Shown here: one piece after another, positions 1 to 4,146 of the stretch
Numbering within the stretch: the first letter of the stretch is position 1
Layout of the letters: each line of letters begins with the position of its first letter
NCBI RefSeq assembly: GCF_001194135.2
Contig: NC_068988.1
Location: forward strand, 33,543,644-33,576,941
From: Octopus bimaculoides
Taxonomy: Eukaryota
DNA: 33,298 nt
Reading direction: 5' to 3'
The notes under the pieces: generated by a model
Databases searched by the model: none
Told to the model about the DNA's origin: nothing
The model's input: only the letters and a program-made list of their open reading frames with translations
Program-made: the position numbers and the translations under genes

Positions 1-258
1 TTCTGCAATAATGATAAGTTACGGGGACGTAAACACATCAACACCGGTTGACACGGCGTGATGGGGAGACAAACATAGACACAAAGACAGACATACACAA
101 ATATATACAAATATATACGTTGAGCTTCTTTCAGTTTCCGTCTAACAAATCCACTAACAAGGCTTTGGTTGGCCAGAAGCTATAGTAGAAGACACTTGCC
201 CGAGGTCCCACAGAGTTGGACTGAACCCAGAACCATTTGGTTGGGAAGCAAGCTTCTT
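1..258 (-). mobile_element. tRNA-derived SINE (octopus-type) whose 5' head is cut off by an insertion
   Basis: The minus strand reads AAGAAGCTTGCTTCCCAACCAAATGGTTCTGGGTTCAGTCC (B-box-like)...GGGCAAGTGTCTTCTACTATAGC...GACGGAAACTGAAAGAAGC, then a simple-repeat tail. This matches the abundant octopus SINE as I recall it. The extreme 5' part with the start of the A box is missing. Confidence 0.85.
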
Positions 259-748
259 TATTTCATCAAGATTGGCCATAAAGGCCTTATATTATTGGTC
301 TTCTTCTACAGAGGCAGAGAGGTGGAGGAAGAGCTAGGAAAGCATCAGAAGGGAGCAACTTTGGCCAAAGGAAGCTGTGAAATGGATATAGACATAATGT
401 TATGTGGAAAAAAAGTTATCATTAATGAATAAATGGGGGAGAACAAGCAGCGCCCGCCGACTGTCTGATCCCCGAAAACATTGATCTCTTATATGTGAGG
501 CAGCAAGCCTCTTACACTGTTCGTTATGTTCATTGCTACAAAAAGGAGGCATTACGCCTCTTACTTTGCTTTAAACAAAATGTGGTTTCAAACCCCTCCT
601 CAATTCATAACATTGAGGCTTTCCAACTTTTTATCCATATTCCTCCCCAGCATCGCTTGTGACCATATCTCCCGCCAACGCCCATGCCTCGTTTAAGCAC
701 ACAGCGTCTGACGTGTCGGCGTCGCCCGGCTACAAGCTATATTTCTCA

Positions 749-1847
749 TTAAGTTCCTCCAACGTTTGCATCACAGCCAATGTTNNNNNNNNNNCATTCG
801 GGATCACGTGTGCAGGCCAAAGTTGCTCCCTTCTGATGCTTTCCTAGCTCTTCCTCCACCTCTCTGCCTCTGTAGAAGAAGACCAATAATTCCTCTTCCT
901 CCGCGGACGTGATAGGCGCAATTCCACCCGACGATGGTTCAACGTCCGTTGGCAGCTCAACCATCCGCAGGTCAACCGTCGGCATACCATTTTTTTTTCC
1001 CTTTTTCTCTTTTTCTTTTTTCTGATAGGAGGGGAGTCCTATGGTTTATCCGGGAGATTAAATTCCCCTTCCATCTCTACATTATTTATGTGAGGTTTCG
1101 GCGGGCTACTATCAATGCCCGCCTTTCTCTTTTTCCCCTCTTTCAGTTAGGCCTCCACCTCCTCATTTTTTCCACCTGCTGAGCAGGACTGCGTTCTTTA
1201 TTAATTGACTGCTCCGGGGCCACTCTCAGGTCCCAGTGACAATCCTTTATATGGCCGAGCTCCAGGCATCCATGACACTTGGGAGAGGGGCGCCTTCGAG
1301 TATCACAGGATACCTAGATCCAGCCATAGTCGAGTAGTCTGAAAAAACCACACTGTCAGCAGCTAACTGGGTCAACAGAGTCAACACAGCTTTAGCTCCG
1401 ATCCAATCAGCTACCGGCAACTCTTTTACATTTAACAATTTGGTGTTCTTATTGCCACCAAGTTCCCGTCAGATAGTTGCTGCTATCCGTTCGGGCTTAA
1501 CCCCTGGCGGCAACCCACACTACCACGCACGCTTGCATTTTCTCTCACAATATGAGGGGAGAAACAGAATTATTTTCCAGGGGCTGACTGTCGAACTTAT
1601 ACGCTATCTCCGGGGTCTCGATCAGCAACCATACAGATGCATATTTTGAACCCCTAGCAATATGCGTTATTATCGGCATGTATTCCGTCAGCTCTTCTAT
1701 CTCTGGTCTGGAAAAGGGGTCAATGGTGTCCAAGGACCTTGAATAAGTCCTCAGAACCACTGCCCTCTCCTTCACATCTTTCTCCCATTCTTTGGATGGG
1801 TTGATCTCCCACTCCAACTTAATGTTATTATTTTTTATTCTTTCCAT
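749..1847 (-). pseudogene. Decayed ORF1 (gag-like, CCHC-type zinc knuckle) of element B
   Basis: MERIKNNNIKLEWEINPSKEWEKDVKERAVVL...IITHIARGSKYASVWLLIETPEIAYKF..., continuing across frameshifts and stops to GLTPGGNP (reverse-frame GLPPGVKP-like) and to CHGCLELGHIKDC at 1239-1277, followed by a charged low-complexity tail. The 3' boundary is approximate. Confidence 0.7.
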
Positions 1848-1917
1848 GTTCACAGTTAACTGTAGAAGAAAATTAAAACAAAAATGCAAGAAGCAAGAAA
1901 AAAGGAGAACAGGAAAA

Positions 1918-2819
1918 ACAGTTAAAAAATTAGTTAAATTACCACTGTCCTCTGGCCTATTTGAACTCCTGGCCAGTCCTGAGTAATCCACAATATCCAA
2001 ATAATTTTTCCACAAAATCTGGTGTTCACTGTATAATTAACAGCAATCAGTACTTGAATGTCCATAAACAGAGACAAAAATCCAGTTGCGAAGGTCTTCA
2101 GTAAAAAAAATTCAATAGATAAATTCTTGCATTGCGGGATAGGCCCCCTGAGAATTTTTCAACAAATCCAACGCAACTAAAGCCGAATAAAATTGCCTCC
2201 AGACCACTGGAGATACCTTACTAGTTAAAAAATATATAAAATACGAGTAACACACCCCACTGTGTCCCCAAAACAAAATCCCCTCCTAGCTTCAGGCTGA
2301 GCTGCTAGTACCTCATCGTAGACTTAATCCACAACAGAGCTAAATTTCGCCGTGTTGTCATTACAAAAAAAGAAAAAAATACACAGTTAAAATGTTTACT
2401 GTTCTCTGGCCTATTCCAACTCCTGGCAAGGTCTGGGTAATCCGATTTAGGTAATCCACGATATCCAAATAATTTTATCCACAAAATCTGGTGTTTGCTG
2501 TATACTTACCAGCAATTAGTACGTGAATGTCCAGGAACAAAAATCCATTTACTATAGTCTTCAGTAAAAAAATTTTCATTAGAAAGGATTCTTGCGTTGC
2601 GGGATACGCCCCCTAAGAATTTTCAAGAAAACCAACGTTACCAAAGGCGAACAAAATTGCCCCGAGACTAGTGGAGATAGCTTACTAGTGAAAAATAACA
2701 ATAAAACACACTAACGCACCCCTAGAGAAACAAAATTTCTCCTACCTTCAAGCTGCACAGCAAACATATTTTCGTAGACTTAATCCACAACAGTGCAACA
2801 TTTAGCTATGTTGTCATTA
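1918..2819. repeat. Two diverged tandem copies of a ~450-465 bp unit in the 5' region of element B
   Basis: 1918-2363 and 2383-2819 share colinear blocks: ACAGTTAAAA, TCTGGCCTATT, ATATCCAAATAATTTT..CCACAAAATCTGGTGTT, GTCTTCAGTAAAAAAA, TTGCGGGATA, CGTAGACTTAATCCACAACAG, GTTGTCATTA. Confidence 0.92.
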
Positions 2820-2877
2820 TAGTTTGTGAAACCACTCTGATTCACACATTCACCGAGAAGCTGGAAGCAAGCTTCTT

Positions 2878-4146
2878 TATTTCAATATTTTTGCAATAAA
2901 GGCATTACAGAGAATGGACACTACAACACACGTGGGGACATATAACAATTAAAAATATAAAAATAAAATATGATATAGTGAATGAAACATGAAAATGCAC
3001 GTGAGTAACAAATAAAAAATATGATAACATGAATGATATCTGAAAATGATATTATGAAGAGAGTTCTACTCACCCCACACTGAGTAACACCACTCGTTGC
3101 CTCTGAGTCCTAACTCCTTTTTTCCTTTTAGTTTAAACCTTTTTCCTCTTTCTCCATCACTTGATGATAGCGTTCTCATTTCCATGCATTCATAACCTTT
3201 TTCACCGGGAGTGGGGTCGTCTAAATTTTGTGGTGTTTGTTCTCTCTTTTTCTCTTTTTTTTTCTTGTGGGTAAATGGGGTGGGTGGGTTTGGTGCCTGT
3301 ATGGGTAGGGTGGGTCTGAGTTGTCTTAGGTGGGATGGAGTTGGACTGGGGGTACCACATCATACTCACTGTCTTTTCTTTTTTCCTCTTTCTCCTTCTT
3401 CTCTCTGAAACCTTCGAGTCTTCCTCCTTCTTCTCCTTTCCTCCGTCTGTCGTTTCTTCTCTTTTCTCTTCCGTCTCCACGACTGTATCTTCAACCATTG
3501 TCCACTGTAGGGGGAAGTATGCTCTGATATTGCCCTTTTGGTCACATTTAAAACAACGTGGTACTCTGCTCTCTACCCATACCCTCAGCACGATTTCCCC
3601 CAACGTCACCGTCTCTGCCAAGGAGATTACCCTCCTCCACTTGAATGATTAGCTCCAGTGTCCTTCCTTTACATCCCACTCCTTCTGTTTCTGTGGCTCG
3701 GATGACAGCTGCCTCCTCCTCGCTTCCAACAAGGACAGCTGCCGCCACCCAAGCCAATTCTATATCCGGTGGAATTTGTTCTACCTTCACCTTGGAAGTC
3801 TTTCTTCCAAGTTATGTGAGCAGAAGCACTACCTCCTCTATTTTCACCGCCACACTCGCCAGCTTCCTCGCCTCCTCTACTGTTCTGAATTGTACGACCA
3901 TTGTGCCATATTTTCTTCCTTTCGTCATGAATATTATTTCTTTCGACTTCTCCCTTAGTGCTTTTTCCGTTTCAGCTTCCACCTGCTCGACCTTTTTCCC
4001 TTTGAGCAAGAACACGTTATAGATGATCGTTCTTCTTTCCATTCGCTCCATAATTCTTTTAGGGGGGGGGGCGACAGTTTCACTTCCCTTCCCACCTTCT
4101 GTACCATCTTCTCATATTCCTTCAGACCGGTCAAGTCCAATTCCCT
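2878..4146 (-). mobile_element. Element A: second ORF1-only L1/Tx1-like element; 5' end lost in the gap 4147-4996
   Basis: The 3' end ...GCCTTTATTGCAAAAATATTGAAATAAA abuts the same 15-bp target. ORF1 ends about 320 bp upstream of this end, leaving no room for ORF2. Confidence 0.7.
3202..4146 (-). pseudogene. Decayed ORF1 (gag-like, degenerate zinc knuckle) of element A
   Basis: ...ERMERRTIIYNVFLL...EIIFMTKGRKYGTMVVQFRTVEEARKLAS...KVEQIPPDIELAWVAAAV...RVWVESRVPRCFKCDQKGNIRAYFP, then an E/K/R-rich tail. The knuckle at 3514-3555 has H>N and C>F. By eye it is alignable to element B ORF1. Confidence 0.75.

What the first reader, a model, noticed from the sequence alone, without database searches (positions are those of the whole stretch)
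244..4146. Head-to-tail pair of retroelements inserted at the same 15-bp site of a SINE head: candidate SINE-targeting retrotransposon system
Seen in sequence: the 22-mer GGAAGCAAGCTTCTTTATTTCA occurs identically at 244-265 and 2863-2884. On the minus strand the order is [element A]...TGAAATA-AAGAAGCTTGCTTCC-[element B]...TGAAATA-AAGAAGCTTGCTTCC-CAACCAAATGG (rest of the SINE). The 15-mer is continuous with the SINE body and looks like its own tRNA-derived head. Established: Tx1-clade non-LTR elements are often sequence-specific for multicopy targets (tRNA, snRNA, other transposons), and repeated insertion at a duplicated target gives tandem arrays. Inference: A and B are two diverged families that both target this very abundant SINE, using it as a renewable safe landing site, and the 15-mer is the target-site duplication.
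Basis: partly seen in the sequence, partly recalled or inferred. Interest (0 to 1): 0.85.

Follow-up and report, generated by a model that had tools for sequence, protein, structure and literature searches.

The report
LINE fragments stacked in a SINE head
Two broken, helper-dependent octopus LINE elements sit head-to-tail at one spot in the tRNA-like head of a common octopus SINE; this looks like site-preferring insertion of a known general kind, but a genome-wide count is still needed to prove it.

Summary
The 22-mer is exact at 244-265 and 2863-2884, and the minus-strand order is A, 22-mer, B, 22-mer, SINE body. Intact SINE copies from Octopus vulgaris and O. sinensis place the 15-mer at SINE positions 23-37, between box A and box B. 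A and B are ORF1-only derivatives of an octopus LINE group. A full relative in O. vulgaris has ORF1 plus an ORF2 with endonuclease, reverse transcriptase and zf-RVT domains, and its 3' tail is homologous to A's tail. Both tails end in ...GAAATA joined to SINE position 23, and B's leader is joined to position 37, which fits a 15-bp target-site duplication used twice. Homology to an O. sinensis copy shows the 10-N gap is small and both sides are collinear.

Two results limit the "SINE-targeting system" reading. The two O. sinensis B relatives carry SINE 1-37 only at their 5' end, and the one with an intact 3' end has no SINE body after it, so the head travels with the element there. Also, this LINE group forms mixed head-to-tail arrays at three other loci with no SINE at the junctions. 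Verdict: partly supported; a new member of the known class of site-preferring LINEs.

The parts
1..243 (-). SINE body, from SINE position 38 onward. The window begins inside the SINE's 3' part.
   Evidence: 86% identity to SINE positions 23-157 of an intact O. vulgaris copy, plus a match to the SINE tail; box B GGTTCAGTCC at 218-227.
244..258 (-). Downstream copy of the 15-mer AAGAAGCTTGCTTCC (SINE positions 23-37), continuous with the SINE body.
259..290 (-). 3' tail of B: small hairpin GGCC-TTTAT-GGCC followed by AATCTTGATGAAATA.
   Evidence: Same hairpin-plus-A-rich layout and motif as the L002, L003 and L011 LINE tails; predicted hairpin.
291..366 (.). Perfect inverted copy of 815-890 (a piece of B's own 3' UTR). 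Origin unexplained.
   Evidence: 76 nt, 100% complementary. L004 has only the one forward copy.
367..784 (-). B 3' region. It holds two similar hairpins, GAGGC-GTAAT-GCCTC (546-560) and GAGGC-TTGCT-GCCTC (498-512). The second contains AAGAGGCTTGCTGCC, a 13/15 match to the 15-mer.
   Evidence: Collinear with L004 to about window 520.
785..794 (.). Assembly gap, about 27 nt missing by homology.
   Evidence: L004 17495-17554 bridges it.
795..1202 (-). Lys/Glu-rich C-terminal end of B ORF1 and the start of B's 3' UTR (includes the native arm 815-890).
   Evidence: 80% identity to L004 17376-17495; translation.
1203..1850 (-). B ORF1 remnant with a CCHC knuckle (CHGCLELGHIKDC), broken by frameshifts and stops.
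   Evidence: 62-66% identity to O. sinensis LOC115225585 (P0001); translation.
1900..2820 (-). Two tandem ~460-bp monomers in B's 5' UTR.
   Evidence: repeat families D1, D3, D5, D6, D8, D9; alignment.
2821..2862 (-). B 5' leader, homologous to the leaders of the O. sinensis copies.
2863..2877 (-). Upstream copy of the 15-mer, directly before B's leader.
2878..2940 (-). 3' tail of A (hairpin GTAAT-GCCTTT-ATTGC, then AAAAATATTGAAATA).
   Evidence: About 60 nt align to the L002 LINE tail.
3217..4146 (-). A ORF1 remnant, running into the gap.
   Evidence: 61% identity to O. bimaculoides A0A0L8GU38 and 57-60% to P0002.
4147..4996 (.). Assembly gap hiding A's 5' end and whatever lies upstream of it.

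Best explanation
A and B are non-autonomous, ORF1-only derivatives of an octopus LINE group of the L1/Tx1 type. They must be copied by the enzymes of a full-length relative.

Proposed mechanism: each was inserted by target-primed reverse transcription into the tRNA-like head of one SINE copy. The bottom strand was nicked between SINE positions 22 and 23, and the top strand 15 bp downstream, between positions 37 and 38. Positions 23-37 (the 15-mer) were therefore duplicated at each insertion. Because a duplicated copy is again a usable site, a second element landed at the same place and produced the head-to-tail pair.

In the B family the upstream SINE piece (positions 1-37) was later carried along with the element as a 5' extension. 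This explains why relatives elsewhere keep 'SINE 1-37 | leader' without being inside a SINE.

Shown: the anatomy, the homologies and the junction positions. Inferred: the nick positions, the order of events and any real preference for the SINE.
For: - The exact 22-mer occurs twice.
- The 15-mer is SINE positions 23-37.
- The A and B ORF1s are homologous to each other and to the ORF1 of a 5.3-kb element whose ORF2 has Exo_endo_phos, RVT_1 and zf-RVT domains.
- A's last ~60 nt align to that element's tail. B's tail has the same small hairpin followed by an A-rich end. A, B and the L011 A-like element all end in GAAATA.
- Two different families therefore join SINE position 23 at the same nucleotide.
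- B's leader joins position 37 in the window and in two O. sinensis loci, with homologous leaders.
- A 15-bp duplication fits the perfect 16-bp repeat that flanks the L011 ORF1-only element.
- Both 15-mers are identical, although SINE copies differ by 1-3 nt in this stretch.
- Precedent in Kojima 2015 (PMC4494074): Tx1 families prefer other transposons, lie next to other families at the same target, and can carry 5' extensions derived from the target.
Against: - Only one locus shows the 3' junction with a SINE body.
- The O. sinensis copy with an intact 3' end (L004) is followed by (TG)n and non-SINE DNA. L001's 3' end is cut by another repeat, and no SINE body lies anywhere in that locus.
- Arrays of the same LINE group in L002, L011 and L012 have no SINE piece at their junctions, so tandem stacking does not need a SINE.
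- The head-leader junction is inherited within the B family, so the upstream 15-mer could simply be B's own head.
- A's 5' side is hidden in the gap.
- No genome-wide count was possible.
Confidence: 0.5

Rival explanations
1. There is no SINE targeting. The B family owns a captured SINE head (positions 1-37) as its 5' end. The upstream 15-mer is what remains of that head after a 22-nt 5' truncation. A and B are stacked by the same general process that builds head-to-tail arrays of this LINE group elsewhere, either insertion at the 5' ends of resident relatives or template jumping. The SINE at the end is hit, or jumped from, only because its head looks like B's head.
For: - SINE 1-37 | leader is inherited in the three B copies.
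- L004 has the head only at its 5' end.
- Arrays without any SINE occur in L002, L011 and L012.
- The L011 unit sits exactly at the 5' end of the next unit.
- Tail ends are conserved, so the shared 7-mer needs no duplication.
Against: - It needs both B's head and an independent SINE to be cut at exactly position 23.
- It needs the two 15-mers to be identical by chance, although SINE copies vary there.
- It does not explain why the captured head ends 15 nt after the tail attachment point, a normal duplication length for this group.
Confidence: 0.25
2. B is a single insertion with a 22-bp target-site duplication into an older junction where A's tail already abutted a SINE starting at position 23. 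The shared TGAAATA belongs to the duplication, not to B's tail.
For: - 22/22 identity is explained at once.
- Perfect direct repeats of 16 bp flank a relative in L011, so long duplications occur in this group.
Against: - B's tail would then end at ...GGCCAATCTTGA, lacking the A-rich ...GAAATA end seen in relatives.
- Sequence upstream of the 22-mers is also similar between A and B (anchored alignment p about 0.015).
- B's 5' junction would fall on the family's ancestral position 37 by coincidence.
- A's own junction with SINE position 23 would still need explaining.
Confidence: 0.15
3. The duplication is an assembly artefact. The two 22-mers lie in different contigs joined across the 10-N gap, next to a perfect 76-nt inverted repeat.
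For: - The gap is at 785-794, with a 100% inverted repeat at 291-366 / 815-890.
- The scaffold has many gaps.
Against: - The independent O. sinensis copy L004 is collinear with the window across the gap in the same orientation.
- The two 22-mers have different flanks on both sides, so both junctions must exist in the reads.
Confidence: 0.03

Closest known systems
Target-specific Tx1-clade LINEs (Tx1L in Tx1D; Tx1-Mar in Mariner-N4_AMi; Keno in U2 snRNA genes), per Kojima 2015, PMC4494074
   Same: - An apurinic-type endonuclease LINE with ORF1, landing repeatedly at one position of another multicopy element.
- Different families stacked at the same target.
- 5' extensions derived from the target.
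   Different: - Here the target would be the tRNA-like head of a SINE.
- The two elements in the window have ORF1 only.
- Clade membership was not tested by RT phylogeny.
- Other arrays of the same group are not in this target.
tRNA-gene-specific non-LTR elements (NeSL-1_TV, LIN15_SM, LIN25_SM), per PMC4640811
   Same: Insertion inside a tRNA-type sequence.
   Different: - Those elements encode a restriction-like endonuclease and target real tRNA genes.
- The relative found here has an Exo_endo_phos endonuclease, and the target is a SINE head.
HAL1 (half-L1), ORF1-only derivatives of L1 (Bao and Jurka 2010, cited in PMC4494074)
   Same: Non-autonomous LINE derivatives that keep ORF1 and the 3' end and lack ORF2.
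   Different: - HAL1 has no reported site preference or captured SINE head (from my own knowledge, not checked here).
- The ORF1 here has a CCHC knuckle and gave no Pfam hit to the L1 ORF1 family.
5' additions of small-RNA sequence to retroposons (SINEU heads, U6-L1 chimeras)
   Same: A small-RNA-derived or SINE-derived piece sits at the 5' end of a LINE-type unit and is then inherited by its copies.
   Different: The piece here ends exactly where the target duplication would end. That points to transcription from a master copy sitting inside its target rather than to a random template switch.

Membership tests
Non-LTR (LINE) retrotransposon derivative | ORF1 homologous to the ORF1 of an element that also encodes an endonuclease and a reverse transcriptase | tested here: met
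   L002 ORF1 matches A (34-51% identity) and B (24%) by tblastn. In L002 it lies directly upstream of an ORF2 with Exo_endo_phos, RVT_1 and zf-RVT domains.
Non-LTR (LINE) retrotransposon derivative | 3' tail shared with the autonomous partner | tested here: met
   A's last ~60 nt align to the L002 tail. B has the same hairpin followed by an A-rich end.
Non-LTR (LINE) retrotransposon derivative | Own ORF2 (autonomy) | tested here: not met
   tblastn with L002 ORF2 finds nothing in 1-4146. A and B are non-autonomous.
Tx1 clade | RT domain groups with Tx1 in a phylogeny | not testable with these tools
   No reference RT set was on hand. Only the domain layout of the L002 relative is known. L1-Tx1 families are reported as recently active in O. 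vulgaris (PMC13282606).
Target-specific LINE | Most copies sit at the same nucleotide of the same target sequence | tested here: inconclusive
   Two 3' junctions at SINE position 23 (window) and three 5' junctions at position 37 (window, L001, L004). However, L004 has no SINE at its 3' side, the arrays in L002, L011 and L012 have no SINE, and no genome-wide count was possible.
Target-site duplication | Identical short direct repeat flanking the insert, present once at the empty site | tested here: inconclusive
   The repeat is exact and its length fits the 16-bp repeat in L011. No empty site was available.
tRNA-derived SINE (SINE2) | Head with box A and box B at tRNA-like spacing | tested here: met
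   TGGCTGTGTGG at positions 11-21 and GGTTCAGTCC starting near position 53 in intact copies. ARAGORN calls the joined head a tRNA only at a relaxed threshold. Rfam and ARAGORN find nothing in the window itself.

The most novel reading that the evidence does not exclude
An octopus L1/Tx1-type LINE group uses the 5' (promoter) ends of other retroelements as landing pads. The pads would include both its own relatives and the pol III head of an abundant SINE. This would build mixed head-to-tail arrays inside chromosome arms. ORF1-only members would have captured the SINE head as a heritable 5' module.
Probability: 0.3. Interest if true: 0.65.

Novelty: new member of a known kind. Interest (0 to 1): 0.45.

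Why it matters
SINEs make up about 11.6% of the O. vulgaris genome and LINEs about 12.9% (PMC13282606). A LINE lineage that prefers SINE heads, or retroelement 5' ends in general, would have a harmless and self-renewing landing site. It would also inactivate SINE promoters by splitting box A from box B. Its ORF1-only, head-carrying derivatives would show one way new composite retroposons arise. The practical value is modest: it would explain a class of nested, arrayed repeats that confuse octopus assemblies and gene models.

Tried and rejected
- A protein search with the ORF that spans the SINE/22-mer/B junction found nothing.
- Scans of metagenome, prokaryote-genome and viral collections for SINE motifs found no octopus DNA.
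- A literature search for SINE sequence strings found nothing.
- Pfam on the A and B translations gave no hit.
- A look-up of a window ORF found no record. P0002 and P0003 are not on record either.
- The Logan RNA contigs L005-L010 and L013 carry ORF1 relatives but show no match to this SINE. L014 added nothing.
- My guess that B keeps the start of ORF2 was not supported.
- A misjoin at the 10-N gap was rejected on L004 collinearity.
- A third, degenerate 'tail + 15-mer' junction at 499-555 is left open. The motif match is unlikely by chance, but it lies in a duplicated hairpin and the local-alignment test is marginal (p about 0.045).
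Full report
**Observation.** The 22-mer GGAAGCAAGCTTCTTTATTTCA is exact at 244-265 and 2863-2884. There is no other match at up to 3 mismatches, and none in 100 shuffles. On the minus strand the order is: gap 4996-4147, A (4146->2885), 22-mer, B (2862->266), 22-mer, then CAACCAAATGGTTCTGGGTTCAGTCC.... 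The window has seven N gaps.

**Organism and the SINE.** B's ORF matches Octopus sinensis LOC115225585 (P0001, 56% identity). A's ORF matches an O. bimaculoides protein (P0003, 61%). Relatives found by an exhaustive search are mostly annotated Octopus proteins, with some unnamed Logan and ENA contigs. Loci fetched from O. vulgaris and O. sinensis contain intact copies of the SINE. Their heads read (A)GGCGCAGGAGTGGCTGTGTGGT AAGTAGCTTGCTTAC CAACCACATGGTTCCGGGTTCAGTCC. Among copies the 15-mer varies by 1-3 nt.

**The gap at 785-794.** A third B-family copy (L004, O. sinensis) is collinear with the window on both sides of the gap. Window 914->795 matches L004 17376-17495, and window 753->712 matches L004 17554-17595. 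The join is therefore right, both sides have the same orientation, and about 27 nt are missing. I found no coding sequence across the gap; the recognisable B ORF1 lies at 1203-1850. A perfect 76-nt inverted repeat (291-366 / 815-890) lies around the gap. The arm at 815-890 is native B sequence. The inverted arm has no counterpart in L004 and remains unexplained.

**What A and B are.**
- Each carries a degraded ORF1 on the minus strand with a CCHC knuckle and no Pfam hit.
- The two ORF1 families are homologous (24% identity, E 2e-16).
- In O. vulgaris (L002) a homologous ORF1 of 503 aa sits upstream of a 1132-aa ORF2 with Exo_endo_phos, RVT_1 and zf-RVT domains, in a 5.28-kb unit.
- tblastn with that ORF2 finds nothing in A or B, so both are ORF1-only and non-autonomous.
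- A's last ~60 nt align to the L002 tail.
- All tails share one layout: a small hairpin (A: GTAAT..ATTGC; B: GGCC..GGCC; L002, L003 and L011: (G)CCC..GGG(C)), then an A-rich end.
- The A-like ORF1-only element in L011 ends ...AATAAAGAAATA, and the window's A and B end ...TTGAAATA and ...GATGAAATA.
- The shared 7-mer is therefore a normal tail end. The weak similarity upstream of the 22-mers (p about 0.015) is real homology between tails.
- B also has two ~460-bp tandem monomers in its 5' UTR.

**Junctions.** Both tails are joined to SINE position 23. B's leader is joined to position 37. The same 5' junction occurs in two O. sinensis B-family copies:
- L001 9452-9489: AGGCTGAGGCATGGCTGTGTGGTAAGTAGCTTGCTTCC | TGTGCATGCG
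- L004 15703-15740: AGGCGCAGGCGTTGCCGTGTGGTAAGAAGTTTGCTTCC | ACTGCGCATG

The leaders of all three copies are homologous. Attachment points 15 nt apart are what staggered nicks give. A perfect 16-bp direct repeat flanks the L011 ORF1-only element, so this duplication length is normal for the group.

**What argues against a dedicated SINE-targeting system.**
1. L004's tail (...CTTATGGATATTTGAATG) is followed by (TG)n and non-SINE DNA. No SINE body lies near the L001 or L004 elements, and L001's 3' end is cut by another repeat. There the head is a 5' extension that moves with the element.
2. The head-leader junction is inherited within the family. The upstream 15-mer in the window may therefore be B's own.
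3. This LINE group stacks head-to-tail without any SINE:
   - three 99.3-99.4% identical units in L002, with 5 nt between units;
   - at least five units of different subfamilies in L011, including the ORF1-only unit placed exactly at the 5' end of the next unit;
   - two diverged units in O. bimaculoides L012.

**Best reading (about 0.5).** Both elements entered the head of one SINE copy by target-primed reverse transcription. The nicks fell at 22|23 and 37|38, which duplicated positions 23-37 each time, and a duplicated copy was reused. The B family later spread from a master copy lying in a SINE, taking SINE 1-37 along. This matches what Kojima described for Tx1 families that prefer another transposon, lie beside other families at that target, and show target-derived 5' extensions (PMC4494074). 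It explains four things:
- the identical 15-mers;
- the same nucleotide being used by two families;
- the 15-nt spacing of the attachment points;
- the O. sinensis copies.

**Rivals.**
- About 0.25: a captured head plus the group's general stacking habit, with no SINE preference.
- About 0.15: one B insertion with a 22-bp duplication into an older A/SINE junction.
- About 0.03: a misassembly.

**Comparison with known systems.** Site-preferring LINEs of the Tx1, R1 and early-branching groups are well known, including ones aimed at transposons and at tRNA genes (PMC4494074, PMC4640811). L1-Tx1 families are listed as recently active in O. vulgaris (PMC13282606). I found no report of a SINE head as the landing site in the papers I searched. 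If confirmed, this would be a new member of a known kind. Tx1 membership itself was not testable here.

Noticed in passing
window 291-366 and 815-890: Perfect 76-nt inverted repeat inside B's 3' region. One arm is native (it has a homologue in L004). The inverted arm sits directly before B's tail and has no counterpart in L004. It could be filler or template-switch DNA made at insertion.
   Followed up: partly
window 498-512 and 546-560 (minus strand): Two similar hairpins, GAGGC-TTGCT-GCCTC and GAGGC-GTAAT-GCCTC. The first contains a 13/15 match to the SINE 15-mer. It could be a third degenerate junction or just a 3' UTR structure; the homologous L004 site has AGGC-ACTTC-GCCT.
   Followed up: partly
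window 1900-2820 (minus strand): B's 5' UTR holds two ~460-bp tandem monomers (about 80-90% alike). The O. sinensis relatives have one.
   Followed up: partly
L002 4436-19184 (O. vulgaris OX597840): Three head-to-tail copies, 99.3-99.4% identical, of a 5.28-kb LINE with intact ORF1 and ORF2 in the first copy. Only 5 nt lie between units, and the third copy is cut at its 3' side.
   Followed up: partly
L011 2479-20850 (O. sinensis CM016867); L012 (O. bimaculoides CM046605): Mixed head-to-tail arrays of different subfamilies of the same LINE group. The first L011 unit is a 1.7-kb ORF1-only element flanked by the perfect 16-mer GGATGTGATATAATGA, which is also the first 16 nt of the next unit.
   Followed up: partly
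L001 3000-4900, 10976-11195, 16500-18081; protein P0003: The O. sinensis B-like gene lies in a C2H2 zinc-finger gene cluster and is followed by a repeat that also follows the zinc-finger coding stretches. An O. bimaculoides gene model (A0A0L8GU38) fuses an A-like ORF1 to a zinc-finger array.
   Followed up: no
window 32260-33250 (+), 25756-26268 (+), 11698-11735: A degraded reverse-transcriptase fragment of another LINE (weak match to L002 ORF2), an open frame that looks to me like a mariner-type transposase N-terminus (not tested), and a short fragment of the SINE tail. None appears linked to the finding.
   Followed up: no
L003 9090-9350: An otherwise complete SINE copy carries a long palindromic, MITE-like insert in its 3' part.
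   Followed up: no
window 256-261 and 2875-2880 (minus strand): The join of the tail end (...GAAATA) to the SINE 15-mer (AAGAAG...) creates AATAAA, a canonical poly(A) signal, 13 nt before the end of the 15-mer. Transcripts could end right after the duplicated piece.
   Followed up: no
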